DNA of 64,000 nucleotides, from positions 62,001-126,000 of the IMG/VR virus record IMGVR_UViG_3300027541_000009. One strand, written 5' to 3'. Within the stretch, counting starts at the first letter, position 1; every line of letters starts with the position of its first letter. The position numbers and the translations under genes were made by a program. The notes beneath the pieces were generated by a model. The model was not told the DNA's origin, ran no database searches, and saw only the letters and a list, made by a program, of their open reading frames with translations. This document shows, piece after piece, positions 2,374-35,261 of this stretch.

Positions 2374-2536
2374 AATTGAACTAAAGAATCTAAGTAAGAT
2401 ATTTGAATATGAAAAAATAAGTAGAGAATTAGATGAATGCTCTGATATAGAAACACTCAAGTTGGTAGCAAAATCTTATTTTAAACTTTACCTCTCAACT
2501 TTAGAAAGTATTGTAGATTTAAATCTTCCCATTTAA
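2360..2536 (+). CDS. Small hypothetical protein (MDPDKIELKNLSKIFEYEK...)
   Basis: GGAG RBS before ATG 2360; ends 2 nt before gp17. Confidence 0.6.
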   Translation: MDPDKIELKNLSKIFEYEKISRELDECSDIETLKLVAKSYFKLYLSTLESIVDLNLPI

Positions 2537-2538
2537 TC

Positions 2539-4230: not shown

Positions 4231-4246
4231 GTAAAGATTACCATTT

Positions 4247-4254
4247 TATAAATA
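4247..4254 (+). promoter_or_regulatory. T4-type late promoter
   Basis: Exact TATAAATA upstream of gp18. Confidence 0.8.
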
Positions 4255-4291
4255 TTACTAGAGAAAATAGACTTCTTCACGAGGTAATCAG

Positions 4292-6748
4292 ATGGCGGTA
4301 AATTTAGTATCACCTGGAGTCAACGTAAGGGAGGTTGACTTAACTGTTGGAAGGATTGATGCATCCAGAGAATTTGTAGGAGCAATTGCAGGACCATTCC
4401 AAAAAGGTCCAGTTAATGAACCAGCATTAATTGAGAATGAGCAACAACTTCTAAACGTTTTTGGTAAACCTCAATTAGCAGATGGTCAGTATGAATATTG
4501 GTTGAGTGCTTCCAATTATCTCTCATATGGTGGAACTTTAAGAGTAGTTAGAACAGATGTAAATGAAATTTTATTTCCAAATTCACTTATTAATGCTAAT
4601 GCATCTCCAAATGGATTTTTAGATGATTTAAAAATTACTTCAGATGAAGATTATTTAAATAATCACTACAATGATGTTAATTGGTATTATTCTTCAAGAA
4701 ATCCAGGATCTTGGTCAAATGATCTGAAAGTATGCATGATTGATAGTGCTGCAGACCAAACAATAAGTGGAATTAATACAACTTTTGTTAGTACTTTAGG
4801 ATTTTCTACAGATTTTACTAGAACAAATATAACCATTGGTATCGGCACAGATAAACTTGTAGGTATTGATACTACTGGAATTACACTACAAACTAAAATT
4901 AATGAGACTGCTTCTGGCGCTATATCCTTTAATACTCTAATTACAGATATTTCTGCGGATGATGGTGGTACAATTACATTTTCACCAAGTTCAGACAACA
5001 CAGGTATTGTAACAGAATCAGTTCAGTTTGGTTCAACTATTGAAATTCAACAACCAAATCAATTACAAGTTGGTGCGGCAGTAACTCAAACACTATCAAA
5101 GAGTGGAGTTGAAGGTTCCCAAGTTGTAACTTATAATGGATATTTAAGAGGAATTATTACTCAAATTGGAAATAAAGAAATATCAGTAAAAATAACTGAT
5201 AGAGTTGATGAAGATGGTGTTTCATATCCTATAGAATATAAAAATCCAGGAGCAAATACTAATTTGAATGCATATTCATTTGATGTTCAGAGAGCTCTTC
5301 CATTTTTTATTACAAATCCCTCACAGATTAGTGCAGTACAATATAATTCTGATGCATTATCTTTATCTGATTGGTATGATAATCAGACTTTAGGACTTAC
5401 AAATTCAACAATATATTGGAAAAATATTGCACCAAAACCTGGAACCTCTCAATATTGTTCAGAAAGAAGTTCTACGAATGATGAACTCCATATAGTTGTT
5501 GTGGATGATAAAGGATCTGTAACAGGTGTTAGTGGAAACATAGTAGAAAAATTTACAAATATTTCAAAAGCAATTGATGCTAGAGTTTCACCATCTCAAC
5601 CAATTTATTATAAAGATCTTATAAAAGATGGTTCAAATTACATTTTTGCAGGTGTACCTGAAATTGGAACTGCTTCTGGACTTATTGTTACAGGAATCGG
5701 AACTGATGCACAACTACAAAGAACCAGTGGATCATGGGGTTCCGCAGCACAAAGCACCAAGTTTAACGTAGTTGGAGCTGTCACTTATGATTTACAGGGT
5801 GGAACTGACTACAGTGGACCTGGTAGTGTAGGTGGATATTCTGCATCGGTTTCAGATTTGATTACTTCATATCAAATTTTTAATAACCCAGCAGAGTACG
5901 GAATTAACTTCTTAATTAATGGTCCTTCAAGTGGAACAACAATTTATGAATCTCAAGCTAAAGCAAATGCTTTGATTTCTATTGCACAAAATAGAAAAGA
6001 TTGTATTGCAGTCGTTTCTCCACATAAACAATCTGTTGTTGATGTAACTAATCCAGAAACACAAACTTCTAATATTATTGAATTCTTTGAACCTTTAACT
6101 TCTTCATCCTATGCCGTTTTTGATAGTGGTTACAAGTACACATATGATAGATTTAATAACAAATTTACATATATTCCATGCAACTCTGATATTGCAGGAT
6201 TAATGGCAAGAACTACATTAAATAATTATTCTTGGTTCTCCCCAGCAGGATCCAATAGAGGATCATTAAACAATGTAGTGAAACTTGCATATAATCCAAC
6301 TCAAGCTCAAAGGGATCAAATTTATACCAAGAGAATTAATCCTATTATTTCATCTCCAGGTGCAGGATTTATACTCTTTGGTGATAAAACTGCACTATCT
6401 TATGCTTCAGCATTAGATAGAATTAATGTTCGTAGATTATTCTTAACTATTGAAGAATCTATCGAAAGAGCAGCAAGAGCACAACTATTTGAGTTCAATG
6501 ATGTGATTACAAGAACCAATTTCATTAATATCGTTGAACCTTATCTTCGTGATGTAAAAGCAAAGAGAGGAATTACTGAATTCTTAGTTGTTTGCGATGA
6601 GACAAATAACACTCCTGACATTATTGACTCTAATCAATTTAGAGCTGATATTTTCGTAAAACCTGCAAGATCCATTAACTTTATTGGTCTTACTTTCGTT
6701 GCTACAAGAACCGGAGTTTCATTCTCCGAAGTAGTAGGAACCGTTTAA
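4292..6748 (+). CDS. gp18: Tail sheath protein gp18
   Basis: LVSPGVNVREVDLT N-terminus; WFSPAG, RINVRRLF and IFVKPARSINFI C-terminal motifs. Confidence 0.96.
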   Translation: MAVNLVSPGVNVREVDLTVGRIDASREFVGAIAGPFQKGPVNEPALIENEQQLLNVFGKPQLADGQYEYWLSASNYLSYGGTLRVVRTDVNEILFPNSLINANASPNGFLDDLKITSDEDYLNNHYNDVNWYYSSRNPGSWSNDLKVCMIDSAADQTISGINTTFVSTLGFSTDFTRTNITIGIGTDKLVGIDTTGITLQTKINETASGAISFNTLITDISADDGGTITFSPSSDNTGIVTESVQFGSTIEIQQPNQLQVGAAVTQTLSKSGVEGSQVVTYNGYLRGIITQIGNKEISVKITDRVDEDGVSYPIEYKNPGANTNLNAYSFDVQRALPFFITNPSQISAVQYNSDALSLSDWYDNQTLGLTNSTIYWKNIAPKPGTSQYCSERSSTNDELHIVVVDDKGSVTGVSGNIVEKFTNISKAIDARVSPSQPIYYKDLIKDGSNYIFAGVPEIGTASGLIVTGIGTDAQLQRTSGSWGSAAQSTKFNVVGAVTYDLQGGTDYSGPGSVGGYSASVSDLITSYQIFNNPAEYGINFLINGPSSGTTIYESQAKANALISIAQNRKDCIAVVSPHKQSVVDVTNPETQTSNIIEFFEPLTSSSYAVFDSGYKYTYDRFNNKFTYIPCNSDIAGLMARTTLNNYSWFSPAGSNRGSLNNVVKLAYNPTQAQRDQIYTKRINPIISSPGAGFILFGDKTALSYASALDRINVRRLFLTIEESIERAARAQLFEFNDVITRTNFINIVEPYLRDVKAKRGITEFLVVCDETNNTPDIIDSNQFRADIFVKPARSINFIGLTFVATRTGVSFSEVVGTV

Positions 6749-7452: not shown

Positions 7453-9135
7453 ATGTCTAAACTGTTTGGATTTAAAATAGAAGAGACTGGGGAAGATAAA
7501 AATAGTCAAATTATCTCCCCAGTTCTTTCTAATGATGAAGATAAATCTAATTTTTATATTACTAGTGGATTTTATGGTCAGTATGTAGATATTGAAGGTG
7601 TATATAAAAATGAAGCAGACTTAGTTAGAAGATATCGAGAAATGTCACTTCATCCAGAATGTGACAGTGCTATCGAAGACGTAGTAAATGAAGCAATAGT
7701 ATCAGATTTAAATGATAGTCCAGTGCAAATTGAACTATCAAATTTACCAGCTTCAGATAAATTAAAAGAAATTATAAGAAAAGAATTCAAATCCATTAAG
7801 GAAATCATGGATTTCGATTCTAAAGCACATGAAATTTTTAGAAATTGGTACGTAGATGGGAGAATCTATTACCACAAAGTAATTGATTTAAAGCACCCAG
7901 AAGAGGGAATTAAAGAAGTTAGATATATTGACCCATTAAAAATTAAATATATTAGAAGACTTAAGAAAAAACAGGAAAATACTGTATCTGCACAAGTTAA
8001 ATCTATACTTGCAAGAAACGGTCAGACTAATGTTGATGAAATTACAAATCCAGAAATTGAAGAGTTTTATTTATATGACCCCTCAGTAGGATATTCTGCC
8101 ACAGTATCTAATTTACATGGAAGTTATACTTCTGCAACTAAAGGGATAAAATTGTCCCCAGACTCAGTTGTCTATGTAACATCTGGTCTTGTTGATAGAA
8201 ACAGACAAACCGTACTATCCTATTTACATAAAGCAATCAAATCACTCAATCAACTTAGAATGATTGAAGATTCTCTAGTGATTTATAGACTATCTCGTGC
8301 ACCTGAACGTAGACTTTTCTATATTGATGTCGGCAACCTACCAAAAATTAAAGCCGAGCAATATATGAGAGATGTTATGAACAGGTATAGAAATAAACTT
8401 GTTTATAATGCAGATACTGGTGAGATTAAAGATGACAGAAAATATATGGCAATGCTTGAAGATTATTGGTTGCCTCGTAGGGAAGGTGGAAGAGGAACTG
8501 AAGTTACTACTCTACCTGGTGGTCAGAATCTAGGAGAACTTTCAGATATTGAGTATTTTCAGAAGAAACTTTACAAATCACTTGGGGTTCCATCTACAAG
8601 ATTAGATTCGGGTGGTGGATTTAACCTCGGAAGATCTTCAGAAATTCTTCGTGATGAATTAAAATTTACCAGATTTGTAGGAAGATTAAGAAAGAGATTT
8701 TCTAATGTCTTTTTAGACATGCTAAAAACACAACTTATATTAAAAAATATTGTAACTCCAGAGGATTGGAAAGTATTATCTGAGCATATTCAATTTGATT
8801 ATCTTTATGATAACCATTTTTCAGATCTTAAGAAAAATGAGATTATGAATGATAAACTTGGTGTGGTTGCAGCAATGGATCCATATCTTGGTAGATATTT
8901 CTCTGCAGAATATGTAAGGAGAGAAATTCTCGGACAGAGTGATAGTGAAATGCTTGAAATAGATAAACAAATGAAAAAAGAAATAAAAGATGGAATAATT
9001 CCAGATCCTGCTGCAATGATGCAACCTGAAATGGGAGCACCTATGCAACAAGGAGATATCGGAACAGATGCTTTAGGTGCTCCGATGAAAGAACCCGGAG
9101 TATCAGACTCTAATGTTCAAGCTGGAGAAATTTGA
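7453..9135 (+). CDS. gp20: Portal protein gp20
   Basis: WYVDGR, RAPERRLFYIDVGNLPK and EDYWLPRREGGRGTE motifs. Confidence 0.97.
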   Translation: MSKLFGFKIEETGEDKNSQIISPVLSNDEDKSNFYITSGFYGQYVDIEGVYKNEADLVRRYREMSLHPECDSAIEDVVNEAIVSDLNDSPVQIELSNLPASDKLKEIIRKEFKSIKEIMDFDSKAHEIFRNWYVDGRIYYHKVIDLKHPEEGIKEVRYIDPLKIKYIRRLKKKQENTVSAQVKSILARNGQTNVDEITNPEIEEFYLYDPSVGYSATVSNLHGSYTSATKGIKLSPDSVVYVTSGLVDRNRQTVLSYLHKAIKSLNQLRMIEDSLVIYRLSRAPERRLFYIDVGNLPKIKAEQYMRDVMNRYRNKLVYNADTGEIKDDRKYMAMLEDYWLPRREGGRGTEVTTLPGGQNLGELSDIEYFQKKLYKSLGVPSTRLDSGGGFNLGRSSEILRDELKFTRFVGRLRKRFSNVFLDMLKTQLILKNIVTPEDWKVLSEHIQFDYLYDNHFSDLKKNEIMNDKLGVVAAMDPYLGRYFSAEYVRREILGQSDSEMLEIDKQMKKEIKDGIIPDPAAMMQPEMGAPMQQGDIGTDALGAPMKEPGVSDSNVQAGEI

Positions 9136-9164
9136 TAAATAATCAGAACTAACAAATTAATTTT

Positions 9165-9323
9165 ATGGAAGACCTAATTACAATGATTGTTAATGGTGAA
9201 ACTCCTTCAGATGTAAGTGACAAAATTAAAGAGCTTCTTTATATGAGAGCTGCAGAAAAAGTGGAATCACTAAAACCTGAAGTTGCAGCAAGTGTTTTTG
9301 GGGATGAGCAATCTGAATATTAA
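9165..9323 (+). CDS. 52 aa hypothetical protein (MEDLITMIVNGETPSDVSDKIKELLY...), absent from the ORF track
   Basis: Translated by hand; fills the gap after the portal, where T4 has small prohead core genes. Confidence 0.65.
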   Translation: MEDLITMIVNGETPSDVSDKIKELLYMRAAEKVESLKPEVAASVFGDEQSEY

Positions 9324-9357
9324 TAATAATAAATAACTAATATAAGTATCAAATACT

Positions 9358-9918
9358 ATGTCTGCGTTTAAAATTGTACAAAATTTACCTACTTTGAGTG
9401 TTGCAGGAACTGGAATAGTGACTTCAACTCCTATTGCACTTAAATCCGGTTATTTGCGTATTGTACCAGAACAAAATACTTATATTGAATTAGGTACAAC
9501 ACCAGTAGTTAACACCTCAACTTCAATATGGATTCCTGCAAATGGTGAATTAATCTTAAAAGAAACTGTAAGATCACAACCAACTGTAGGAATACAAACA
9601 GGAGCAACTACAACAATTACAGTACCATCTGGAACTGGATGTGCATTTGAAGTTGGTGATTATGTATCACTATCTGGAATTTCTCCCGCAGGAATTAATA
9701 CTAATTTTGCACGAGTTTCCAATATTGATCAATCTACATCATATGATAGCCCACATCAAACCAAAATGGTTTTGAGTTGGGATACATCATCACAAGGTCC
9801 TGTTACTGTACCTACAGGTGAAGTTAGAAAAGTAACCAAAGTTGCTGCCTATAATGACAGTGGTTCCTCTTCAAAAATTCATATTACAGAAGTACAAGTC
9901 GTATCTAATTTCAGCTAA
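9358..9918 (+). CDS. Hypothetical beta-rich, probably virion-associated protein
   Basis: 186 aa Thr/Val/Gly-rich ORF whose stop overlaps the gp21 start. Confidence 0.7.
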   Translation: MSAFKIVQNLPTLSVAGTGIVTSTPIALKSGYLRIVPEQNTYIELGTTPVVNTSTSIWIPANGELILKETVRSQPTVGIQTGATTTITVPSGTGCAFEVGDYVSLSGISPAGINTNFARVSNIDQSTSYDSPHQTKMVLSWDTSSQGPVTVPTGEVRKVTKVAAYNDSGSSSKIHITEVQVVSNFS

Positions 9919-10571
9919 TGAAACTAATCACAGAAGAAATTGAACAGGTAGAAGTTATCGTTGAAGAAATCAACGGTAAAAAATCTCTCTACATTGAAGG
10001 AATATTTTTACAAGGAAATATTGCAAATAGAAATAGAAGAATGTATCCAATGGACACCCTGAGAAAAGGGGTTAATTTGTATACTGAAAATTATTTAAGC
10101 AAAGGTAGAGCAGTAGGTGAACTTGGTCACCCATCTGGACCAACTATCAATTTAGATAGAGTTTCTCACAATATTATTTCACTAAAAGAAAGTGGTAATA
10201 ATTTCATAGGCAAAGCTAAAATTTTAACTTCCTTACCAATGGGTAAAATTGCAGCAGGTCTTTATGAAGAAGGTGTAAAACTTGGAGTTTCTTCTCGTGG
10301 TGTTGGTACGTTAGTCCAAACCAATGAGGGTTACAGTAAAGTAAGTGAAGATTTCATGCTTTCTACTGCTGCTGACATTGTGCACGATCCATCTGCACCT
10401 GAAGCTTTTGTAAATGGAATCATGGAAGGTGTTAGTTGGTTATATGATTCTAAAAAACAAATTTGGATTTCTGAAAATATTAAAAATAAGATTGAAAATG
10501 ATGTAGTTTCTAGAAGATTAACTGAAGAAAGAAAATTACAACATTTTGAAAATTATTTAAAACTCATATAA
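9918..10571 (+). CDS. gp21: Prohead core protease gp21
   Basis: NRNRRMYP, GELGHP, VSSRGVG and DIVHDPSAPEAFV motifs. Confidence 0.94.
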   Translation: MKLITEEIEQVEVIVEEINGKKSLYIEGIFLQGNIANRNRRMYPMDTLRKGVNLYTENYLSKGRAVGELGHPSGPTINLDRVSHNIISLKESGNNFIGKAKILTSLPMGKIAAGLYEEGVKLGVSSRGVGTLVQTNEGYSKVSEDFMLSTAADIVHDPSAPEAFVNGIMEGVSWLYDSKKQIWISENIKNKIENDVVSRRLTEERKLQHFENYLKLI

Positions 10572-10582
10572 AAACTCAACAT

Positions 10583-10590
10583 TATAAATA
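10583..10590 (+). promoter_or_regulatory. T4-type late promoter
   Basis: Exact TATAAATA upstream of gp22. Confidence 0.8.
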
Positions 10591-10629
10591 AATACAGAAT
10601 AAAACAATAAGGTTATTCGGAGAGTTCAA

Positions 10630-11856
10630 ATGTCTCGTGGTAAAAACTTACAAGAAATGGAAGTAGGCACTAAGCAATCCAAAACTGCTGTCAATGCTGG
10701 TGCAAAGGCAGGAGACCCAATGGCAAAGTTAACTACAGGTATTCCTGATGGTCAAACAGCTGGATGGGAAGATTTGGGAGGTCCTACCCCAGAAAATAGT
10801 CGTCCTGATGATGATAGTAATAAATTGAAAGATCCTGCTGCAATCCTTCAGCAAGTAAGAGACGTAGTAAATCGTGGTGCTAAAGCAGCCGATCCTATGA
10901 AACATCTTGCAAAAGGTGCAGTTAAAGAAGAGGAAGAATTAGATGATGAAGATCTGATCGATGAAGACTTGGAAGACGAAGTAGTTGAAGAAGCTGCAGA
11001 GTCTGAAGATGAAGAAAAATCTTCTAAGAAAAAGTCTAAGAAAAAAGACGAAGAAGAAGATGAGGATGAAGAGGACGAGGATGAAGAAGACGAGTCCATG
11101 AAGGAGCAAATCGAAGAAATCGAGACTCAGATTGAAGAAGATGTAGAGGCACTCCTTTCAGGTGAAGAACTTTCCGAAGAATTTAAATTCAAGGCAAAGA
11201 CTGTTTTTGAAGCAGCACTAAATGCCAGAACTGAGCAAATTGAAGAAGCAATCGTACAAAAGTACGAACAGCAACTTTCAGAAGAAGTTGAAGCAATTGC
11301 TGAATCTTTAACTGAAAGAGTAGATTCCTATCTTGAGTATGTTGCTCAAGAATGGTTGGAAGAGAATGCAATTGCTCTAGAGCAAGGTCTCAGAGCAGAA
11401 ATGACAGAGAGCTTCCTCAATAATCTCAAGCAACTTTTTGAAGATCATTATGTAACTATCCCTGAAGAAAGATATGATGTACTTGAGAGCATGGTAGAAA
11501 AACTTGATGATATGGAGACTAAACTCAACGAGCAAATTGAAAGAAATATTGCTCTAAACAAAAGACTAGCAGAGTCAGTTACCGATGTAATCTTTGGTGA
11601 AGTTTCTGAGGGTCTTGCACTTTCTCAGAAAGATAAGCTTGCTTCTCTTGCGGAAAATGTTGAGTTTGATGGTGAGGAAGAATATCGTGAGAAACTAGTA
11701 ACATTGAGGGAATCTTATTTCCCATCTACTACTGGTACTCCAAGAAACACCCAAGATTATCTAGTAGAAGAAACTACTGAGACTATGCAATATCAGTCAA
11801 CCAGTAGAACTATGGATGCATACTTAAATGCACTTGGAAAGGTTTCTAGAAAGTGA
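10630..11856 (+). CDS. gp22: Prohead scaffold protein gp22
   Basis: Acidic coiled coil with LSEEFKFKAKTVFEAA and VDSYLEYVAQEW; lies between gp21 and gp23. Confidence 0.92.
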   Translation: MSRGKNLQEMEVGTKQSKTAVNAGAKAGDPMAKLTTGIPDGQTAGWEDLGGPTPENSRPDDDSNKLKDPAAILQQVRDVVNRGAKAADPMKHLAKGAVKEEEELDDEDLIDEDLEDEVVEEAAESEDEEKSSKKKSKKKDEEEDEDEEDEDEEDESMKEQIEEIETQIEEDVEALLSGEELSEEFKFKAKTVFEAALNARTEQIEEAIVQKYEQQLSEEVEAIAESLTERVDSYLEYVAQEWLEENAIALEQGLRAEMTESFLNNLKQLFEDHYVTIPEERYDVLESMVEKLDDMETKLNEQIERNIALNKRLAESVTDVIFGEVSEGLALSQKDKLASLAENVEFDGEEEYREKLVTLRESYFPSTTGTPRNTQDYLVEETTETMQYQSTSRTMDAYLNALGKVSRK

Positions 11857-11910
11857 ATTTTAGATAATAAAAATCAAACAAAAAACAATTTTACACAGAG
11901 GTAAATTCAA

Positions 11911-13320
11911 ATGCAAATGTTCAATGCAGAACAGCTGCAGGAAAAGTGGGCACCACTCCTTGACTACAATGGTCTTAATGAAATCAAAGATCCACATCGT
12001 AGAGCGGTAACTGCTATCCTGTTAGAGAACCAAGAAAAAGCTCTTAGAGAAGAGAGAGAATTTCTTACAGAAGCAACCCCAACCATGAACACTGATCCCG
12101 CAGGATCAGGTGCAGCAGGTTTCAGCTACGGTGCTTCCGCAGCAGGTCCAGTAGCAGGTTTCGACCCAGTTCTGATCTCACTGATCAGACGTTCAATGCC
12201 TAACCTTGTTGCATATGACCTAGCAGGTGTTCAACCAATGAACGGTCCTGTAAGTCTCATTTTCGCAATGAGATCACGTTATACCAACCCACAAGGTAAT
12301 GAAACATTCTACAATGAAGTAGATACCACCTTCTCTGGTCAGAATGCTGGCAGAAACAATGACAATGGTTGGACTAACGGTAACGTTGGTTTCGGAACCA
12401 CTGCACAGGTTGGTTCAAACCCAGGTCTTCTCAACCCAACTTCTGCACCTCTCGGTGAGTACAATGTTGGTCAGGCAATGAGCACTTCTGAGGCAGAAAG
12501 TCTCGGTAATGATCTCAATGATGCTGGCACCTTCTTCAACGAGATGGCACTTAGCATCGAGCGTGTATCCGTTACTGCTAAGTCTCGTGCTCTGAAAGCA
12601 GAATACAGTCTTGAGCTTGCTCAGGATCTGAAGGCAATTCACGGTCTGAATGCTGAGGCTGAACTTGCAAACATTCTCTCAACTGAGATTCTTGCTGAGA
12701 TCAACCGTGAAGTTATTCGTACCATCTACATGATTGCAGAACCTGGTGCACAAAATAACGTTGCAACTCCTGGTATCTTTGACCTTGATGTTGACTCCAA
12801 CGGTCGTTGGTCAGTTGAGAAGTTCAAAGGTCTTATTTTCCAAATGGAAAGAGATGCCAACCTGATTGCACAAAGAACTCGTAGAGGTAAGGGGAACATG
12901 ATTCTCTGCTCTGCAGACGTTGCTTCAGCACTGTCTCACGCAGGAATCCTGGATTACACCCCAGCACTCAACGCAAACCTCCAGGTAGATGACACCGGTA
13001 ATACTTTTGCAGGTGTTCTCCAAGGTAAGTATAAGGTTTATATCGACCCATATTCTGCAAACAATAGCAACACCCAGTTCTATGTTGCTGGTTACAAGGG
13101 AACCTCACCTTACGATGCAGGTCTCTTCTATTGCCCATATGTTCCTCTCCAAATGGTTCGTGCCGTTGGTGAGCAGTCCTTCCAACCAAAAATTGGATTT
13201 AAGACTCGTTATGGCATGGTTGCTAACCCATTTGCTGAAGGTCTTAACCAAGGTCTTGGAAGACTCCAGAGAAACTCCAACACCTACTACAAGAGAACTC
13301 TTGTTAAGAACCTCATGTGA
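11911..13320 (+). CDS. gp23: Major capsid protein gp23
   Basis: GVQPMNGP, VTAKSRALKAEYSLELAQDLKAIHG and QPKIGFKTRYG motifs. Confidence 0.98.
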   Translation: MQMFNAEQLQEKWAPLLDYNGLNEIKDPHRRAVTAILLENQEKALREEREFLTEATPTMNTDPAGSGAAGFSYGASAAGPVAGFDPVLISLIRRSMPNLVAYDLAGVQPMNGPVSLIFAMRSRYTNPQGNETFYNEVDTTFSGQNAGRNNDNGWTNGNVGFGTTAQVGSNPGLLNPTSAPLGEYNVGQAMSTSEAESLGNDLNDAGTFFNEMALSIERVSVTAKSRALKAEYSLELAQDLKAIHGLNAEAELANILSTEILAEINREVIRTIYMIAEPGAQNNVATPGIFDLDVDSNGRWSVEKFKGLIFQMERDANLIAQRTRRGKGNMILCSADVASALSHAGILDYTPALNANLQVDDTGNTFAGVLQGKYKVYIDPYSANNSNTQFYVAGYKGTSPYDAGLFYCPYVPLQMVRAVGEQSFQPKIGFKTRYGMVANPFAEGLNQGLGRLQRNSNTYYKRTLVKNLM

Positions 13321-16430: not shown

Positions 16431-16910
16431 ATGTTAAATCAGGTTATGAATAAAAAACAAAAAAATGTCCACTATGTAAACAATAAAGATTTCCATGATG
16501 CACTCATTGCTTACAAAAGGAAGGTAGACATTGCTAAAGAAAATGGACAACCGAAACCAAGAATACCAAATTATCTTGGAGATTGCTTTTTAAAAATTGC
16601 AACCCACCTTTCATATCGTCCAAATTTCGTAAATTATATGTATCGTGATGATATGATTTCAGATGGAGTTGAAAATTGTGTTCAATATATTCATAATTTT
16701 GACGTAACTCGTAGTAATCCTTTTGCATATTTTACTCAAATAGTTTACTACGCATTTCTTCGTAGGATTGGTAGAGAAAAGAAGCAAGTGGAAATAAAAG
16801 AAAAAATTCTAGAAAGAACTTCTTTTGATGAAGTTTTCACAGCAGATGAACATTACAGCAGTTCAGATTATAATTCTATTAAAGATGCTGTTTATTCTAA
16901 GTATTATTGA
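16431..16910 (+). CDS. gp55: Late transcription sigma factor gp55
   Basis: HYVNNKDF, LSYRPNFVNY and NPFAYFTQIVYYAFLRRI motifs. Confidence 0.95.
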   Translation: MLNQVMNKKQKNVHYVNNKDFHDALIAYKRKVDIAKENGQPKPRIPNYLGDCFLKIATHLSYRPNFVNYMYRDDMISDGVENCVQYIHNFDVTRSNPFAYFTQIVYYAFLRRIGREKKQVEIKEKILERTSFDEVFTADEHYSSSDYNSIKDAVYSKYY

Positions 16911-30436: not shown

Positions 30437-30491
30437 TTATTCTTGATTATCCAATTTAAATCTCTCTAAATATTTGGAGAGATTTTTTTGT

Positions 30492-31475
30492 ATGGATATT
30501 ACTGTAGATCAGGTTTACGATGAATTAATAAAAAAACCAGAGTATTCCTCAAATATAGTAAAAGAGGCTAATAAAATCACTATATACTCAAATGATTCAA
30601 TAAAAAAATCAGAAGAAAGGAAAAATAAACTAAGAGGAATTAGAGATTATTTAAGAGAGAAATTTCCAGAATCTTCTAATCTTATAATTTACAATCCTAA
30701 AGGATCTGGTAGTACAATAGGAAGAACTGAGATAATAAATAGTGGATCTCGGGATATAGTAGTACTTTTAAAACCAGTACTAGAACCAATTATTCTAAAA
30801 AATTGGCTTTTAAATGAAGAAATGTTTGCTGACATATCTAATGAATATAAAGATTATGCAGATGAAGATTCAAGTAAATATAAAATACTTATAAGTGATG
30901 GTAGAAAAAGTATCATTATAGATGATGTTAAAAGTGTTACTAGAGTTGGGGGATTGAATAAAAAGTCGGATATAAAAATAACTAAGACAATAGGAAAAGA
31001 ATATAACATATCCTTAAAAATGTCTCAGTTTCCAGCTTGGCAAGGATATGCAAATAGTAGTCCATCTGCAGTAGAGACTGCAAAAAAAATAATAAGCAAT
31101 TTAGTAAATCCTACTGCTTCATTTGGTAAAGGTTCTGGTGGAGTTTCTGTTATCTCTACTTTATCTGAAGTTAAAGAATTTTGTTTTGGTGGAGATGGGT
31201 CAAATAGAGTAGATTATATTATTAGTGCAGATTTTACATCAAAATCACCTAAATCTTCATTTAAATATAATCAAGATACTAAAACTCTTACTATAATAGT
31301 GAATAAAATATATTCTAGAACTCCTATTGATTATGAAGAAGTTAGAAAAAATTGTTATTTGTTAATCTCTAAAGTTTCCAATGCTAGCATTACAATAGGA
31401 AATCAATATAGAGGATATCAAATATCATTTGTTCCAGAAAGTAGAGTTAGAAACACCATTCCAGGAAAAAGATAA
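30492..31475 (+). CDS. Hypothetical protein, possibly a PD-(D/E)XK nuclease
   Basis: KKSDIKI...YNISLK motif pattern. Confidence 0.5.
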   Translation: MDITVDQVYDELIKKPEYSSNIVKEANKITIYSNDSIKKSEERKNKLRGIRDYLREKFPESSNLIIYNPKGSGSTIGRTEIINSGSRDIVVLLKPVLEPIILKNWLLNEEMFADISNEYKDYADEDSSKYKILISDGRKSIIIDDVKSVTRVGGLNKKSDIKITKTIGKEYNISLKMSQFPAWQGYANSSPSAVETAKKIISNLVNPTASFGKGSGGVSVISTLSEVKEFCFGGDGSNRVDYIISADFTSKSPKSSFKYNQDTKTLTIIVNKIYSRTPIDYEEVRKNCYLLISKVSNASITIGNQYRGYQISFVPESRVRNTIPGKR

Positions 31476-31494
31476 ATAATTAAAAAACTAATCA

Positions 31495-32694
31495 ATGAAG
31501 TCCTTTCGTCAGTTTATATCAGAAGCTTTAGAAACTGTAGCATCATCTCAAGCCAAGCAAATGGGTTTGAGGGGGAATGGTCATGGAGATTGGTACGACA
31601 ATCAAGGAAATTTAGTAGCAAAAACTGTTGGTGGAAAATTAAAAGTATTTAAAGGGAGAGGTGGAAAGGGACCTAGAGATGAATCTCAACCTCAAACTAA
31701 ACAAAAGATATCAGTAACTGATAAAGTTTCTCAACAACAATCTGATGCACAACAGCAACAGTCGGACGGATCCGATGGAATCGTTGTAGTATTTGGAAGA
31801 TTTAATCCACCATCTAGGAATCATGAGCAACTTTTAAAATTTGGATTTGCTAGATCTAAAGAATCTGGATATGACTATAGAATTTACCCAAGTCGTATTC
31901 AAGATGCTGGAACTAATCCATTGAATCCTTCTTTGAAGGTTCAATTTATGCAGATCATGTATCCAGAGTATGCAGATTATATTTTAGATAGTGAAGACTC
32001 TAAGACAATTTTTGATGTACTTGAATCTTTGTATGGAGATGGATATAAGAATGTTAAAATTGTAGTTGGATCAGATAGACTTGGAGAATTTCAAAGTCTT
32101 GCTCATAGGAATGATGGTCAGAATTATACTTTCGATAATATAGAAGTATTATCTGCATCTGTTAGAGATCCTGATAGTGATACTGCAGGTTCTGGATCTT
32201 CTGTAGCATTGAGAACTGCTGCTGCTGAAGGAAATTATGAAGCATTTGCTTCTAATCTTCCACCTAAAATGAAAACTGCAGATAAGCAGCAATTATTTGA
32301 TTCTGTAGTTAAATCGATGAAAATTGGTGAGGATTTAGAATTGTGGAAGATTGCCCCCGAACTTGATATGGAAAGTTTGCGTATAAATTATAAAAAAAAT
32401 AATTTATACCCTGTAGGTTCTATGGTTGAAAATTTAAATACCGGATTATCAGGAAGAGTTTTAAGAAGAGGTACAAATTACCTTATCTGTGTTACAGAAA
32501 GTGGGGTAATGTTTAAATCTTGGTTGCAAAATGTAAGAGAATCTACTTATGAGGTAGGGACAGATAAGTATAGGGAAAAACTTCAAAGCATGGTACATGG
32601 TCAACCTATAAAATCTTTTACTAAAATTCCCATTAAAGAAACTGTACCTAAAAACCTAAATAAACTTAGGAAAGATTTGCAAAAAGTAAAATGA
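31495..32694 (+). CDS. Cytidylyltransferase-like (HUP-fold) nucleotidyltransferase with a capsid-targeting-like N-terminus
   Basis: VVFGRFNPPSRNH, IVVGSDR and SSVALR motifs; N-terminus MKSFRQFISE. Confidence 0.8.
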   Translation: MKSFRQFISEALETVASSQAKQMGLRGNGHGDWYDNQGNLVAKTVGGKLKVFKGRGGKGPRDESQPQTKQKISVTDKVSQQQSDAQQQQSDGSDGIVVVFGRFNPPSRNHEQLLKFGFARSKESGYDYRIYPSRIQDAGTNPLNPSLKVQFMQIMYPEYADYILDSEDSKTIFDVLESLYGDGYKNVKIVVGSDRLGEFQSLAHRNDGQNYTFDNIEVLSASVRDPDSDTAGSGSSVALRTAAAEGNYEAFASNLPPKMKTADKQQLFDSVVKSMKIGEDLELWKIAPELDMESLRINYKKNNLYPVGSMVENLNTGLSGRVLRRGTNYLICVTESGVMFKSWLQNVRESTYEVGTDKYREKLQSMVHGQPIKSFTKIPIKETVPKNLNKLRKDLQKVK

Positions 32695-34163
32695 GTTCTG
32701 AGGAAAGAATTTTTTTAGAGGCTACGGCTGCTGAAATTAAAAGAGCTGGTGAGAAGGAACTTAAAAAAACTCAAAAGGAAAATAAAAAGGAAAAAAAGGA
32801 TTCCGAGTGGTATAGGAAGCAGCTCGAGGCAAATCTCGCATATAAGAGAGAAAGATTAGAGTGGCAAAAGGAAAGGTCATTATTAAAGGATAAATTAAGA
32901 AGAAAAAGAGAAACTGAAAAGGGTGCTGAAAGTGTAAAGGAACCACTTCGTAAAATTAAAACTGAAGTAATTAGTGATAAAGATAAAGATCCAACTGCTT
33001 ATCAAAAAGCAATGGGAAGTGCAGCATCTTTAGCAAAAGGACTTGCTACTGCGGGAGTTGCTGCAGTTAAAAGGAGAGCAGAAAAGAAAAAACAAGAATC
33101 TGAAGGACTTAAAAAACCTAAAGTTGGAACTAGAGAACCTAAACCATATTCGATTGCATATAAGTCTGCTAAGAAAAAAAAGAAATTGGAACCTCAAAAA
33201 TTGTCCGGAACTCCAGAGAGAGAAAAACTCCCTGCAGGTAAAGCACCAATTGCAAGAAGACTGCCTGCAGGTCAAGGTCCTAGTAAACCATCAGGTACAC
33301 TTGGACAAAGAGCTAGAAAAAATCCAGAACTTAAAAAAAAGTTAATCGCACAAAGATCTGTTGGAGAAGAATTTTCTTGTTGGAGAGAAGAATTTTTATA
33401 TGAACTAGGGGAACTTAGAAAAAATAAAAAAAATAAGAAAATGAAAAATGGTGATGAAGAAAAAATTATTGATGTAATGAGTGGTAAAAATAAAATTGTA
33501 ATTGGTCCAAAAATTGATGAGCAATTAGATATTGTAGAAGCAAGAAAAAGAGAGAAAATTGCTAATGCAGTTCTTTTAGCAACTATGGCAGCAACTGCGG
33601 GACAATCTCCCAAAGATTTTGTAAGAACTGGTCATATTGAGTCACCTGGAACTGCTCTTATGCAAACATGGGCAAGAAAAAGAGGTGAGGCAGAAAGAAA
33701 TTTAGATAGTGGTAGAGTTTCTCACCCCTCTAGAAACATTAAGAAAAAAAAAGTTACCGAAGAATGTGATTGTGAAAAAGATCCAAAAAAAGAATTAGTA
33801 AAAGCAATAGTCTCAAAAGCTATGAGTGAAAAGAAAAGAAAAAATTATTTGTTGAATTCTGGAATTATTGGGGAAAAGATGGAAATCTCAGAAGCAAAAA
33901 AGTCTGAGATGAAATGTAATAAACCAAGAGCAGAAGCACATGGTTCTGGTGAAACTGGAAAATCTCATGTCGTAAAGGCTTGTGAAGGTGGAACTGAAAA
34001 ATTAATTCGTTTTGGGCAACTTGGAGTCAAAGGTTCTCCAAAGAGAAAAGGTGAATCTAAAGAATATGCAAGTCGTCGTAATCGATTTAAAACAAGACAT
34101 GCAAAAAATATTGCAAAAGGAAAAATGTCTGCGGCTTATTGGGCAAATAAAGTTAAATGGTAA
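32691..34163 (+). CDS. Large Lys/Glu-rich modular hypothetical protein
   Basis: 490 aa; basic modules separated by xxE junctions; C-terminal KSHVVKAC...LIRFGQ...RFKTRH...SAAYWANKVKW domain. Confidence 0.75.
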   Translation: MSSEERIFLEATAAEIKRAGEKELKKTQKENKKEKKDSEWYRKQLEANLAYKRERLEWQKERSLLKDKLRRKRETEKGAESVKEPLRKIKTEVISDKDKDPTAYQKAMGSAASLAKGLATAGVAAVKRRAEKKKQESEGLKKPKVGTREPKPYSIAYKSAKKKKKLEPQKLSGTPEREKLPAGKAPIARRLPAGQGPSKPSGTLGQRARKNPELKKKLIAQRSVGEEFSCWREEFLYELGELRKNKKNKKMKNGDEEKIIDVMSGKNKIVIGPKIDEQLDIVEARKREKIANAVLLATMAATAGQSPKDFVRTGHIESPGTALMQTWARKRGEAERNLDSGRVSHPSRNIKKKKVTEECDCEKDPKKELVKAIVSKAMSEKKRKNYLLNSGIIGEKMEISEAKKSEMKCNKPRAEAHGSGETGKSHVVKACEGGTEKLIRFGQLGVKGSPKRKGESKEYASRRNRFKTRHAKNIAKGKMSAAYWANKVKW

Positions 34164-34466: not shown

Positions 34467-35261
34467 ATGGCACTTTGGGGTAATAAAGACGATGTATTCT
34501 CTCCTGGCTCAGTATCAGTAAATTATGCAACTAAAGTAATTACTGGATCTGGAACTTCTTTCCTTGCAGCTTCTGTTGGTGATGTGATTAGTATTGGTGC
34601 AGGTAAAACTTTTGGTGAAGCAATCATTGATAAAATTAATTCACAGACTTCTATTTCTATTGCTACTACCCAATTTTTAAGTGGTGCTGCCATTTCTGGT
34701 GTAAGTGACTATGTAATTTCACAAAAACCAAAATACACTCAGCATGATACACATTTCACTGCAAACCAAATTTTTGGTGTAGATGAGAGTGAGATTGCAG
34801 TAAATACTTATCTTACTCATGCAGGATGGGTTGGAATTATTACTTATGTAGATAGTAGTGGTGAACTGAGAACAAAGACTGAAACTTTAGTCGCAATGTC
34901 TGGAATTACAACAGGCACAACAACATACGCTACTGCAGGTGATGCGGCAGATGATGCTAAACTTCCAGATGTAGATATCACTATCACTTCTCAACCTGCT
35001 TCTGTTGGAGTAGGAACCACTCAAACAGCAACATTTAGTGTTGCTGCAACTGTAGTTCCTTCAACTGCACCTCTATCTTACCAGTGGAGGAAGTCTACAA
35101 CTGCAGGTGGATCGACTTATGCTGACATTGCTGGAGCAACTAACTCCAGTGTAAACATTACTAATAATGGAACTGCAAATAACGGATATCGTTATCGTGT
35201 CGTTATTACTAGTGGTGATGTTTCAGTAACGTCTTCATTTGCTACATTAACTGTTTCATGA
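34467..35261 (+). CDS. Virion structural protein with a C-terminal Ig-like domain
   Basis: ITITSQP...ATFSV...LSYQWRK...GYRYRVVI...ATLTV Ig-like pattern; late promoter. Confidence 0.75.
   Translation: MALWGNKDDVFSPGSVSVNYATKVITGSGTSFLAASVGDVISIGAGKTFGEAIIDKINSQTSISIATTQFLSGAAISGVSDYVISQKPKYTQHDTHFTANQIFGVDESEIAVNTYLTHAGWVGIITYVDSSGELRTKTETLVAMSGITTGTTTYATAGDAADDAKLPDVDITITSQPASVGVGTTQTATFSVAATVVPSTAPLSYQWRKSTTAGGSTYADIAGATNSSVNITNNGTANNGYRYRVVITSGDVSVTSSFATLTVS

What the first reader, a model, noticed from the sequence alone, without database searches (positions are those of the whole stretch)
31495..32694. Nucleotidyltransferase apparently tagged for packaging and injection
Seen: N-terminal MKSFRQFISE, a Gln-rich linker, then a HUP-fold core (FGRFNPP, VGSDR) whose usual HxGH/TxGH motif reads SRNH. 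Inference: the enzyme is delivered with the genome and acts at once, for example on NAD or nucleotide-signal pools used in anti-phage defence. The altered motif may indicate changed substrate or activity.
Basis: partly seen in the sequence, partly recalled or inferred. Interest (0 to 1): 0.6.

Follow-up and report, generated by a model that had tools for sequence, protein, structure and literature searches.

The report
Capsid-tagged nucleotidyltransferase of a cyanophage
This gene of a large T4-like cyanophage encodes a nucleotide-transferring enzyme that starts with the same kind of ten-residue address label T4 uses to load proteins into its head, so it is probably carried in the virus particle and injected with the DNA; its substrate is still unknown.

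Summary
Window 31495-32694 (+) is a real 399-aa gene in a 284-kb cyanomyovirus that carries psbA/psbD and T4-type head genes. It belongs to the large phage family annotated "cytitidyltransferase/NMNAT-like" (PHROG 395, E 1.5e-74).

It has four parts:
- a decapeptide MKSFRQFISE|A, followed by a small "GHG" module
- a disordered Gln-rich linker
- a nucleotidyltransferase core (Z 12.6 to archaeal NMNAT, about 12 to PPAT)
- a basic SH3-like tail

The decapeptide matches T4's capsid targeting sequence (MKTYQEFIAE|A) at the residues mapped as needed for targeting and cleavage. It is near-invariant in 121 relatives. In phage S-CREM2 it also heads three of the four enzymes checked that mass spectrometry found in virions; the fourth has a similar motif further in. 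The genome encodes a gp21 protease. A late-promoter-like box lies 16 nt upstream, and a metatranscriptome contig starts at the gene. Orthologues were detected in published virion proteomes of three cyanophages.

The packaging idea is therefore well supported, though not proven for this phage.

The SRNH motif is a conserved feature of this uncultured clade ([SAG][KR]xH). All 12 cultured relatives checked keep (T/H)xGH. The other catalytic residues are retained.

A role in NAD or anti-defence is untested.

The parts
31471..31478 (+). Late-promoter-like box GATAAATA (NATAAATA type), 16 nt upstream of the ATG
   Evidence: the genome holds 87 ATAAATA sites, and 46 of them lie within 60 nt upstream of ORF starts, mostly 15-35 nt. 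In the window they precede sheath, scaffold and Hoc-like genes; the same box lies within 45 nt upstream in 7 of 9 orthologues, counting this one. Late timing is inferred, not measured.
31495..32694 (+). Whole gene: 399-aa virion-type nucleotidyltransferase (PHROG 395, 'cytitidyltransferase' family)
31495..31524 (+). Residues 1-10, MKSFRQFISE: capsid-targeting-like propeptide. Cleavage is predicted after Glu10 (ISE|A).
   Evidence: Compared with T4. Near-invariant in 121 relatives: M1 K2 [TS]3 F4 Q6 F7 I8 E10 A11. The same decapeptide heads three of four mass-spectrometry-detected virion enzymes of S-CREM2, and the fourth carries a related motif at residues 18-25. Cleavage has not been shown.
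31540..31650 (+). Residues 16-52: small basic 'GHG' module (A-x3-GL-x3-GHG-x-W/Y-x-D-x2-G-x2-VAKT-x2-GKL), modelled as a helix plus three short strands
   Evidence: Conservation; model. The module also occurs, once or twice, in kinase-like proteins and in proteins of about 870-980 aa of S-N03, ACG-2014f and S-CREM2. It is absent from the S-CREM2 orthologue, which was still found in virions, so it is not needed for virion association.
31651..31776 (+). Residues 53-94: disordered Gln-rich linker
   Evidence: 10 Gln in 42 residues. pLDDT is below 50 for residues 54-92. There is no column consensus among relatives.
31777..32340 (+). Residues 95-282: HUP/Rossmann-like nucleotidyltransferase core (acidic, pI 4.9)
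   Evidence: Foldseek top hits are NadD/NMNAT, E 3e-5. VIA-align gives Z 12.6, rmsd 3.1 over 155 residues to M. thermautotrophicus NMNAT 1m8k, and Z about 12 to PPAT, which is a tie. The homologue in P-SSM2 hits Pfam PF01467 at E 2e-11.
31813..31824 (+). Residues 107-110, SRNH, in the place of the (H/T)xGH signature, on the loop between strand 1 and helix 1
   Evidence: The clade motif is G-[RK]-F-N-P-P-[SAG]-[KR]-[NGSA]-H-E, and His110 is kept in 119 of 121 relatives. All 12 cultured relatives read (T/H)xGH.
32194..32214 (+). Residues 234-240, GSSVALR: second nucleotide-binding signature (the 'SxxxxR' / ISSTxxR type) at the start of a helix
   Evidence: G234 and S235 are invariant, S236 is in 115 of 121, and R240 is R in 105 and K in 16. 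The helix spans residues 236-244.
32341..32691 (+). Residues 283-399: basic C-terminal domain (pI 9.9) with a five-stranded SH3/Tudor/KOW-like barrel at residues 310-349
   Evidence: Separate model, pLDDT 82.9. The best matches reach only Z 6.9, so only the general fold can be named. In P-HM1 this domain sits on a separate protein.
9918..10571 (+). gp21-type prohead protease (Peptidase_S77), the enzyme inferred to remove the tag
   Evidence: (E 1.6e-34). The neighbouring major capsid protein (11911-13320) carries ...EFLTE|A at the expected maturation position (read by eye).
32691..34163 (+). Downstream 490-aa very basic protein, whose start overlaps the nucleotidyltransferase stop (ATGA); probable co-expressed virion protein
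   Evidence: 25.7% K+R, pI 10, ATGA overlap. Weak similarity to S-SCSM1 gp280, which that record marks as 'virion protein'. The same metatranscriptome contig covers both genes.

Best explanation
The gene encodes a late-expressed enzyme that is loaded into the phage head and delivered with the DNA.

Proposed steps:
- Shown: the protein is a three-domain nucleotidyltransferase of the cyanomyovirus 'cytitidyltransferase' family, and it begins with a decapeptide of the T4 capsid-targeting type.
- Inferred: the amphipathic decapeptide docks the protein to the scaffolding core while the prohead assembles. The phage's gp21-type protease then cuts after Glu10 (I-S-E|A).
- Inferred: the mature protein of about 43 kDa has an acidic catalytic core flanked by basic N- and C-terminal modules. 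It stays with the packaged DNA and enters the cell at infection.
- Inferred, catalysis: the protein is an active nucleotidyltransferase that joins an NMP, most likely AMP from ATP, to a phosphorylated small molecule. NMN/NaMN is the first candidate and 4'-phosphopantetheine-like substrates are equally compatible.
- Inferred, active site: in this uncultured clade the first residue of (T/H)xGH has become Ser/Ala/Gly and a Lys/Arg has appeared next to it. This probably re-wires phosphate contacts and does not destroy the site.
For: - Family and fold: PHROG 395 at E 1.5e-74; 555 phage records; HUP fold at Z 12.6 to NMNAT and about 12 to PPAT; transitive Pfam PF01467 hit through the P-SSM2 homologue.
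- Tag versus T4: T4 IPII/IPIII start MKTYQEFIAE|A. Residues 4 and 7 are mapped for targeting and 8 and 10 for processing (PMC9026906). This protein has F4, F7, I8, E10 and A11.
- Tag conservation: these positions are invariant or nearly so in 121 relatives at 55-81% identity. They are kept in all cultured cyanophage orthologues examined, with different codons.
- Same tag on other virion enzymes: in S-CREM2 three enzymes that mass spectrometry found in virions begin with the motif. They are SAM hydrolase (MKDFDSFLEE), kinase (VKRFDAFLTE) and nucleotidyltransferase (MKNFSSFLTE). The 869-aa protein gp12 carries RFASFMAE|A at residues 18-25.
- Pattern specificity: 6 hits in five genomes against 0 in the reversed control. 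The five checked against a public annotation lie at annotated starts, and the sixth is this ORF's own ATG.
- Protease: a gp21 homologue lies in the window.
- Virion detection of orthologues: S-SCSM1 ORF91 (42% identical to this protein) together with its flanking genes, S-CREM2 ORF154, S-SZBM1_140. An NMNAT was also reported in S-CBWM1 virions (cited).
- Timing: a NATAAATA box lies 16 nt upstream and the motif is strongly enriched before ORFs. It is present before 7 of 9 orthologues. In one metatranscriptome a 3,994-nt contig of word depth 520 begins at 31496, while the upstream contigs have depth 13 and 4.
- Active site: R102, N104, P105, H110, R195, D225, D227, S235, S236 and R240 are conserved in the clade.
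Against: - There is no virion proteome, N-terminal sequence or time course for this phage.
- This genome has no second convincing protein with the tag, unlike T4 and S-CREM2.
- The authors of the virion proteomes themselves warn that abundant non-structural proteins may co-purify with particles.
- The promoter box is 16 nt from the ATG, at the short end of the observed range. The contig evidence comes from assembled contigs of one RNA library, which cannot give true 5' ends or exclude DNA carry-over.
- The protein itself fails the Pfam and NCBIfam models, and its (H/T)xGH motif is not canonical, so reduced or lost activity cannot be excluded.
- NMNAT and PPAT are tied structurally, so the substrate is a guess.
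- The complex prediction of the N-terminus with gp21 gave no verdict.
Confidence: 0.55

Rival explanations
1. An ordinary intracellular auxiliary metabolic enzyme (NAD or another cofactor adenylyltransferase), made during infection and not specifically packaged. On this reading the virion detections are carry-over of an abundant protein, and the conserved N-terminal helix serves oligomerisation, membrane association or stability.
For: The proteome papers raise exactly this caveat. The fold resembles NMNAT/NadD. The genome carries a NAD-synthase-like gene that could use NaAD. Jumbo enterobacterial phage homologues are bare cores with neither tag nor tail, so the enzyme can work without being packaged.
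Against: Detection in virion preparations of three different phages, often together with the flanking genes. The decapeptide matches the T4 targeting sequence at the mapped functional positions, and three other unrelated S-CREM2 virion-detected proteins carry it or a close variant. The gene has a late-type promoter box and sits with a Hoc-like head gene in one highly covered RNA contig. No Nampt/NAPRTase is present to feed an NMNAT.
Confidence: 0.2
2. The protein is packaged and injected, but not by a T4-type cleavable targeting peptide. Incorporation would depend on the basic GHG module and/or the basic SH3-like tail binding DNA or a head or portal protein, and the decapeptide would not be cleaved.
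For: The GHG module is shared by several large cyanophage proteins, two of which were found in virions. The N- and C-terminal parts are basic (pI 9.7 and 9.9) while the core is acidic. In gp12 of S-CREM2 and in the S-N03 972-aa protein the decapeptide-like motif lies 17-18 residues in from the start.
Against: The S-CREM2 nucleotidyltransferase and SAM hydrolase lack the GHG module yet were detected in virions and keep the decapeptide. Stenotrophomonas phage DLP_6 has a similar N-terminus (MKNIKDILE|A) without the module. Glu10-Ala11 is invariant, as expected for a gp21 site. T4 IPI also has a longer, 19-residue propeptide.
Confidence: 0.15
3. A catalytically dead internal head protein. In this clade the nucleotidyltransferase has lost its signature and survives only as a structural or DNA-associated capsid component.
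For: (T/H)xGH is replaced by [SAG][KR]xH. The protein scores under every Pfam/NCBIfam model. 2 of 121 relatives even lack His110.
Against: All other active-site-type positions are conserved across 121 sequences that have diverged to 55% identity: GRFNPP, H110, the SR..D..NPL block, G-x-D/E-R, DPD and GSS..LR. The paired change (loss of T/H, gain of K/R) looks compensatory and not like decay.
Confidence: 0.07

Closest known systems
Cyanomyovirus 'cytitidyltransferase / NMNAT-like' proteins (T4-GC 190, PHROG 395), e.g. S-SCSM1 ORF91, P-SSM2 PSSM2_194, S-CREM2 ORF154, S-SZBM1_140
   Same: The architecture is the same: tag, GHG module, linker, core and SH3-like tail. Identity is 39-48% over nearly the full length. 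The decapeptide and the late-type box are shared. Neighbours are similar: a large basic downstream protein and small ORFs that the S-SCSM1 record marks as virion proteins.
   Different: The signature reads S-R-N-H ([SAG][KR]xH in its clade) and not T/H-x-G-H. The second motif reads GSSVALR and not GMSASKMR. The best cultured relative is only 48% identical. No family member has a measured activity in the papers read.
T4 internal proteins IPI, IPII, IPIII (and Alt): capsid-targeted, gp21-processed, injected proteins
   Same: The N-terminal decapeptide has the same form (MKTYQEFIAE|A in T4, MKSFRQFISE|A here) with matching residues at the mapped targeting and cleavage positions. A gp21 homologue is present. 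The cargo is a non-structural protein attached to a short tag.
   Different: There is no sequence relation beyond the tag. The cargo is a 43-kDa enzyme with extra domains and not a small basic inhibitor. Processing and injection have not been shown. Only one convincing tagged protein is seen in this genome.
Archaeal/bacterial NMN and NaMN adenylyltransferases (NadM, NadD, NMNAT) and phosphopantetheine adenylyltransferase (PPAT/CoaD)
   Same: The same HUP fold over residues 93-280 (Z 11.5-12.6, rmsd about 3.1-3.4, 150-160 residues aligned). The G-R-F-x-P lead-in, the terminal His and the C-terminal S-x4-R motif sit in the usual places.
   Different: Identity is 10-17%. There is no significant sequence-level match to any PDB chain, and no equivalog model is passed. 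The first signature residue is not His or Thr. The NMNAT and PPAT matches are tied, so neither can be named as the family.
Phage NAD-reconstitution pathways (NARP1/NARP2; Osterman et al. 2024, known to me only as cited in PMC12801897)
   Same: The idea that a phage-borne NAD-pathway enzyme offsets NAD depletion. This genome also has a NAD-synthase-like gene.
   Different: No Nampt/NAPRTase partner is present. The enzyme is not a recognised NMNAT. The NAD-synthase-like gene sits among glycosyltransferase and methyltransferase genes. No link was tested.

Membership tests
PHROG 395 / cyanophage 'cytitidyltransferase' (T4-GC 190) | Significant profile match over the core and tail | tested here: met
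   E 1.5e-74, residues 88-378 against profile positions 5-298 of 373. tblastn to 383 phage records with at least 80% coverage.
PHROG 395 / cyanophage 'cytitidyltransferase' (T4-GC 190) | Shared domain order (N-terminal tag and module, linker, core, SH3-like tail) and neighbourhood | tested here: met
   Full-length alignments to S-SCSM1, S-SCSM2R, P-SSM2 and ACG-2014f. A large downstream protein follows in each.
Cytidylyltransferase-like HUP nucleotidyltransferases (Pfam PF01467) | Rossmann-like HUP fold | tested here: met
   Foldseek E 3e-5. VIA-align Z 12.6, 155 residues, rmsd 3.1.
Cytidylyltransferase-like HUP nucleotidyltransferases (Pfam PF01467) | (H/T)xGH signature after strand 1 | tested here: not met
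   The motif reads S-R-N-H. Only the last His is kept, in 119 of 121 clade members. All 12 cultured relatives examined do have it.
Cytidylyltransferase-like HUP nucleotidyltransferases (Pfam PF01467) | Second signature (ISSTxxR / SxxxxR type) at the start of a C-terminal helix | tested here: met
   G234-S235-S236-V-A-L-R240, with the helix at residues 236-244.
Cytidylyltransferase-like HUP nucleotidyltransferases (Pfam PF01467) | Score above Pfam's gathering cut-off | tested here: not met
   No hit, even at E 1, for the whole protein or the core, and none in the genome scan. Relatives pass: P-SSM2 at 44.7 bits and P-HM1 at 22.6 bits against a cut-off of 21.
NMN/NaMN adenylyltransferase (NadD, NadM, NadR, NMNAT) | Equivalog HMM cut-off (TIGR00482, TIGR01526, PRK01153 and others) | tested here: not met
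   No hit for this protein. Cultured relatives score only 11-19 bits against cut-offs of 112-341.
NMN/NaMN adenylyltransferase (NadD, NadM, NadR, NMNAT) | Closer in structure to NMNAT than to other HUP transferases | tested here: inconclusive
NMN/NaMN adenylyltransferase (NadD, NadM, NadR, NMNAT) | Makes NAD or NaAD from ATP and NMN or NaMN | not testable with these tools
   An enzyme assay is needed.
T4-type capsid-targeted internal proteins | N-terminal targeting peptide: M-K-x-aromatic-x-x-F-(I/L)-x-E followed by a small residue | tested here: met
   MKSFRQFISE|A here against T4 MKTYQEFIAE|A. The functional positions are taken from PMC9026906. Conservation.
T4-type capsid-targeted internal proteins | The phage encodes a gp21 (Peptidase_S77) prohead protease | tested here: met
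   Window 9918-10571, E 1.6e-34.
T4-type capsid-targeted internal proteins | The protein is present inside mature virions | not testable with these tools
   Not measurable for this uncultured phage. Orthologues were detected by mass spectrometry in S-SCSM1, S-CREM2 and S-SZBM1 virions.
T4-type capsid-targeted internal proteins | The propeptide is removed by the prohead protease | not testable with these tools
   No N-terminal peptide data are available. The complex prediction with gp21 gave no verdict.
T4-type capsid-targeted internal proteins | Made late, while proheads assemble | tested here: inconclusive
   A NATAAATA box lies 16 nt upstream and the motif is enriched before ORFs. An RNA-library contig of depth 520 starts at 31496, against depth 4-13 upstream. 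No time course is available.

The most novel reading that the evidence does not exclude
The T4 capsid-targeting decapeptide may be a conserved address label across T4-like cyanophages that can be read directly from sequence. It would mark a set of injected enzymes: this nucleotidyltransferase, a kinase, a SAM hydrolase and proteins of about 870-980 aa. The injected proteome of uncultured marine and freshwater phages could then be predicted from genomes. Within that set, this clade's nucleotidyltransferase would have a re-wired active site ([SAG][KR]xH) and so possibly a changed substrate or chemistry at the very start of infection.
Probability: 0.4. Interest if true: 0.7.

Novelty: new variant of a known kind. 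Interest (0 to 1): 0.55.

Why it matters
Cyanomyoviruses kill a large share of the ocean's and lakes' picocyanobacteria, yet what they inject besides DNA is almost unknown. Several groups have found this enzyme family in virion preparations but could not tell cargo from contamination. A T4-type targeting peptide on the enzyme, and on the other enzymes found in the same particles, gives a mechanistic reason to believe the cargo is real. It can be tested cheaply by re-searching existing spectra for a peptide that begins at Ala11. It also offers a rule for finding injected proteins in metagenomic phage genomes. The enzyme's substrate is an open question with direct bearing on how infection is primed, through NAD or another cofactor pool or through counter-defence. 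The clade with the altered signature is a natural experiment on the catalytic motif of HUP nucleotidyltransferases.

Tried and rejected
- **PDB sequence and profile searches**. Only low-complexity linker matches appeared (FAM155A), and I rejected them.
- **Pfam and NCBIfam on the protein itself**. No hits. Membership of the superfamily rests on fold and on relatives.
- **Search for paralogues of the N-terminal module or the tail in the phage's own genome**. None were found, so the expectation of several tagged proteins in one genome is not met here.
- **Complex prediction of gp21 protease with residues 1-58**. No verdict, so it is not evidence either way.
- **Protein-atlas look-alikes for residues 1-58 and 283-399**. 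Only unnamed viral clusters came up, all below the 0.9 lead level. A 0.75 hit to a SAM-lyase cluster prompted the S-CREM2 check but is not evidence in itself.
- **C-terminal domain fold searches**. The generic SH3/Tudor/KOW barrel reaches only Z 6.9, so no family can be named.
- **Link to NAD salvage.** There is no Nampt/NAPRTase. A NAD-synthase-like gene exists but lies in a sugar-modification-type cluster. The link is unresolved.
- **Expression class from published cyanophage transcriptomes.** The orthologue group was found in a supplement (Ortholog_68) but without a timing value in the text held. Doron et al. 2016 is not held.
- **Literature search for a capsid targeting sequence in cyanophages**. 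Nothing beyond the T4 review.
- **The big representative-protein search** was not run, because the word search and family scans had already placed the protein.
Full report
**1. The observation**

Window 31495-32694 (+) is an open frame of 399 codons, from ATG to TGA.
- MKSFRQFISE at residues 1-10
- a Gln-rich stretch, with 10 Gln among residues 53-94
- FGRFNPP at 100-106
- SRNH at 107-110
- VGSDR at 191-195

The gene is real and widespread. More than 7,500 metagenomic proteins match at E<=1e-5, and the 120 best are 55-81% identical. tblastn finds it in 555 phage records, mostly Synechococcus and Prochlorococcus myoviruses, where it is annotated cytitidyltransferase, cytidylyltransferase or NMNAT. 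The best cultured match is 48% identical.

**2. The genome**

The window lies in a single 284,050-bp viral contig of 35% G+C. The contig carries psbA and psbD. It also has a T4-type morphogenesis block inside the window: sheath, tube, portal, gp21-type prohead protease at 9918-10571, scaffold and major capsid protein. Upstream of the gene lie a DnaB-like helicase, MazG and an unassigned 333-aa ORF. Downstream lie a very basic 490-aa protein, a 56-aa ORF and a Hoc-like head-decoration protein. The phage is therefore a large, uncultured T4-like cyanophage. Its nearest cultured DNA relative is the freshwater phage S-SRM01. RNA libraries that hold the stretch are labelled aquatic and riverine.

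**3. Anatomy of the protein**

An AlphaFold2 model built on 65 relatives has mean pLDDT 78.6. It gives these parts:
- a helix over residues 4-11
- a second helix and three short strands up to residue 52
- a disordered linker at 54-92
- an alpha/beta core at 95-282
- a five-stranded barrel at 310-349, followed by helices

The core matches HUP-class nucleotidyltransferases. Foldseek's top hits are NadD and NMNAT at E 3e-5.

Sequence methods alone do not see the relationship. There is no Pfam or NCBIfam hit and no significant PDB match. Relatives bridge the gap: the P-SSM2 orthologue is 39% identical to this protein (E 1.6e-97) and hits Pfam CTP_transf_like at E 2e-11.

The tail was modelled separately (pLDDT 82.9). 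It is a generic SH3/Tudor/KOW-like barrel with Z no higher than 6.9, which is too weak to name a family. The core is acidic (pI 4.9), while the N-terminal part and the tail are basic (pI 9.7 and 9.9).

**4. The catalytic signature**

In the usual place of (H/T)xGH, on the loop between strand 1 and helix 1, the protein reads S-R-N-H. This is not a one-off lesion. Among 121 relatives the block is G-[RK]-F-N-P-P-[SAG]-[KR]-[NGSA]-H-E, and the last His is kept in 119.

Every cultured homologue I read has the canonical form:

| Phage | Signature |
|---|---|
| S-SCSM1 | TVGH |
| S-SCSM2R | TIGH |
| P-SSM2 | HAGH |
| ACG-2014f | TIGH |
| P-HM1 | TTGH |
| Sf-FS3 | TIGH |
| S-SRM01 | TVGH |
| S-SSM7 | TVGH |
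| S-N03 | HMGH |
| S-CREM2 | HKGH |
| Stenotrophomonas phage DLP_6 | TVGH |
| Klebsiella phage K64-1 and Escherichia phage A4 | HLGH |

The uncultured clade has thus lost the first His/Thr and the Gly, and has gained a Lys/Arg at the second position, where most of the other sequences read have a hydrophobic residue. The other conserved blocks are intact: the Arg of GRF, the SR..D..NPL block, G-x-D/E-R, DPD, and GSS..LR as the second nucleotide-binding signature. I read this as a re-wired but working site. That is inference.

**5. The N-terminal tag**

T4's IPII and IPIII begin MKTYQEFIAE|A, and IPI begins MKTFKEF... with its cut after a later Glu. I read these from the T4 record. According to the review of Black's work, ten residues suffice for capsid targeting. 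Residues 4 and 7 matter most for targeting and residues 8 and 10 for cleavage by gp21 (PMC9026906).

The window protein has F4, F7, I8 and E10, followed by A11, after the same Met-Lys start. In 121 relatives M1, F4, F7, E10 and A11 are invariant. K2 (120 of 121), I8 (116) and Q6 (96) are near-invariant, and position 3 is Thr or Ser in 119, while the flanking positions vary. Cultured orthologues keep the pattern with different codons, so selection acts on the peptide:
- MKSFLQFLKE|A
- MKSFSKFFSE|A
- MKSFSQFLTE|T
- MRSFLTFLTE|A
- MKNFHQFITE|A
- MKGFSNFLIE|A
- MKNFSSFLTE|A

A strict DNA pattern for M-K-x-F-x-x-F-[LIVMF]-x-E finds 6 sites in five cyanophage genomes, and the reversed control finds none. 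The five sites checked against a public annotation lie at annotated start codons, and the sixth is this ORF's own ATG.

**6. Independent support from published virion proteomes**

Orthologues were detected by mass spectrometry in CsCl-purified virions of three phages:
- S-SCSM1 ORF91, 42% identical to this protein. The record marks both flanking genes and a small downstream ORF as virion proteins.
- S-CREM2 ORF154.
- S-SZBM1_140, described as the only enzyme in that proteome.

An NMNAT was also reported in S-CBWM1 virions (cited in PMC9602691).

I then read four of the six non-structural proteins that the S-CREM2 authors found in virions; I did not read the two endolysins. All four carry the motif:
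- SAM hydrolase gp6 starts MKDFDSFLEE.
- Kinase gp14 starts VKRFDAFLTE.
- The 869-aa gp12 has RFASFMAE|A at residues 18-25.
- Nucleotidyltransferase gp154 starts MKNFSSFLTE.

A small neighbour, gp13, starts MKDLHSFLTE. This link between the motif and detection in virions, across unrelated enzymes, is the strongest argument that the peptide is an address label. I found no paper that makes this link.

**7. The GHG module**

Residues 16-52 form a second conserved element, built around G-L-x3-G-H-G-x-W/Y-x-D-x2-G-x2-V-A-K-T-x2-G-K-L. It recurs in the S-N03 kinase-like protein, where it appears twice. It also recurs in the S-N03 972-aa protein, in ACG-2014f gp178 (980 aa) and in S-CREM2 gp12 and gp14.

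It is optional for virion association. S-CREM2 gp154 and gp6 lack it and were still detected, and the DLP_6 homologue has a tag-like start (MKNIKDILE|A) without it. Its role is open. It may bind DNA or a head protein after the tag has been removed.

**8. Timing**

The box GATAAATA (31471-31478) lies 16 nt before the ATG. The genome holds 87 ATAAATA sites, and 46 of them fall within 60 nt upstream of ORF starts, mostly 15-35 nt. In the window they precede the sheath, scaffold and Hoc-like genes. This fits the T4-type late promoter, TATAAATA read by gp55. That identification rests on my own knowledge, and a gp55-like sigma gene is present at 16431-16910 (read by eye). The same box lies within 45 nt of the start in 7 of 9 orthologues.

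In one poly(A)-selected metatranscriptome, a 3,994-nt contig with word depth 520 begins at 31496 and runs through the nucleotidyltransferase, the basic protein, the small ORF and the Hoc-like gene. Identical-sequence contigs just upstream have depths of 13 and 4. Contigs cannot give true ends, strand or level, and DNA carry-over cannot be excluded. Even so, a step of 40-fold or more exactly at this gene is what a strong promoter in front of it would produce. The stop codon overlaps the next gene's start (ATGA).

**9. Most likely mechanism**

The gene is made late and docked to the prohead core by the decapeptide. It is then trimmed after Glu10 by the gp21-type protease, kept with the DNA, and released into the cell at infection, where it acts as a nucleotidyltransferase.

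What is shown:
- family, fold and domain layout
- form and conservation of the tag
- presence of the protease
- the promoter-like box
- literature detection of orthologues in virions

What is inferred:
- docking, cleavage and injection
- late timing
- catalytic activity and substrate

NMN/NaMN adenylylation is the first candidate. It rests on the top structural matches and on a NAD-synthase-like gene elsewhere in the genome (G000 132621-133259). However, PPAT-like chemistry fits equally well. No Nampt is present. The NAD-synthase-like gene sits among glycosyltransferase and methyltransferase genes.

**10. Comparison with what is known, and verdict**

The protein is a member of the known cyanophage "cytitidyltransferase" family (PHROG 395). 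It works like a T4 internal protein as far as delivery is concerned. It is not a demonstrable NMNAT.

What is already known:
- the family
- its repeated detection in virions
- the speculation about NAD

What appears new:
- the match to the T4 targeting peptide
- the sharing of that peptide by other virion-detected enzymes
- the clade-specific [SAG][KR]xH signature

The NAD or anti-defence idea is untested. I score interest at 0.55. This is a useful, testable refinement for phage biologists and not a new kind of system.

Noticed in passing
window 32691-34163 (+): A 490-aa protein with 25.7% Lys+Arg (pI 10), whose ATG overlaps the nucleotidyltransferase stop. Its last 96 residues match PHROG 7595 (unknown function). 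It is weakly similar to S-SCSM1 gp280, which mass spectrometry found in virions. It is a candidate DNA-associated internal head protein.
   Followed up: partly
L022 (S-CREM2 OR473000) 3837-5081, 7704-10313, 10310-10546, 10579-12846; L023 3609-4469: Four S-CREM2 proteins that mass spectrometry found in virions carry the T4-like targeting motif: SAM hydrolase, the 'Cas9-like' 869-aa protein, the kinase and the nucleotidyltransferase. So does a small 78-aa ORF, gp13. This suggests a sequence rule for injected proteins.
   Followed up: yes
L025 (S-SCSM1 NC_070962) 1716-2036: gp030, a 106-aa hypothetical protein that starts MKTFKQFMSE. It lies between two virion proteins, just upstream of the large terminase. 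It is a candidate small internal protein that the proteome did not report.
   Followed up: partly
L002 1460-4402 (ACG-2014f gp178); L001 2449-4509 (S-N03 kinase); L014 (S-N03 972-aa protein): The 35-residue 'GHG' module recurs, once or twice, at or near the N-terminus of three unrelated large cyanophage protein families. No Pfam family covers the module.
   Followed up: partly
L008 (P-HM1) 2477-3043 and 3067-4374: In P-HM1 the gene is split. A 188-aa bare core (TTGH) is followed by a separate 435-aa protein that starts MKSLADF and carries the SH3-like tail domain.
   Followed up: partly
L016 (Stenotrophomonas phage DLP_6) 1309-3477: A 722-aa homologue in a non-cyanobacterial T4-like phage starts MKNIKDILE|A, followed by a long linker. 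The tag may therefore extend beyond cyanophages. Jumbo Klebsiella and Escherichia phage homologues are bare 178-aa cores that directly follow a DNA adenine methyltransferase gene.
   Followed up: no
G000:C1:132621-133259 (outside the window; L019): A NAD-synthase-like gene (PF02540, E 1e-48) sits between a family-11 glycosyltransferase and a methyltransferase. No Nampt/NAPRTase is present in the genome.
   Followed up: partly
whole genome; window sites before 1876, 4292, 9165, 9358, 10630, 31495, 34211, 34467, 43490, 46022, 48157, 48832, 50071, 51580, 52168: ATAAATA (NATAAATA) is strongly concentrated 15-35 nt upstream of ORF starts (46 of 87 sites). This gives a map of likely late transcription units.
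   Followed up: yes
window 9918-10571 (+): The gp21-type protease itself starts MKLITEEIE. This recalls the L-I-E site near the N-terminus of T4 gp21 that the review mentions as a possible self-cleavage site.
   Followed up: no
window 31496 onwards (run X1): An RNA-library contig of depth 520 starts one base after the A of the ATG and spans about 4 kb of downstream genes. Upstream contigs of the same strain have depth 4-13. In the other three runs laid, a contig also begins between 31465 and 31500.
   Followed up: partly
window 30474-31475 (+): A 333-aa ORF (TTG start, with a possible ATG six codons in) has no PHROG or Pfam match and no similarity to the genes that precede the orthologues in S-SCSM1 or S-SCSM2R.
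   Followed up: partly
window 34467-35261 (+): A Hoc-like, Ig-type head-decoration protein (PHROGs 3086, 613 and 4069) with a perfect TATAAATA 30 nt upstream.
   Followed up: no
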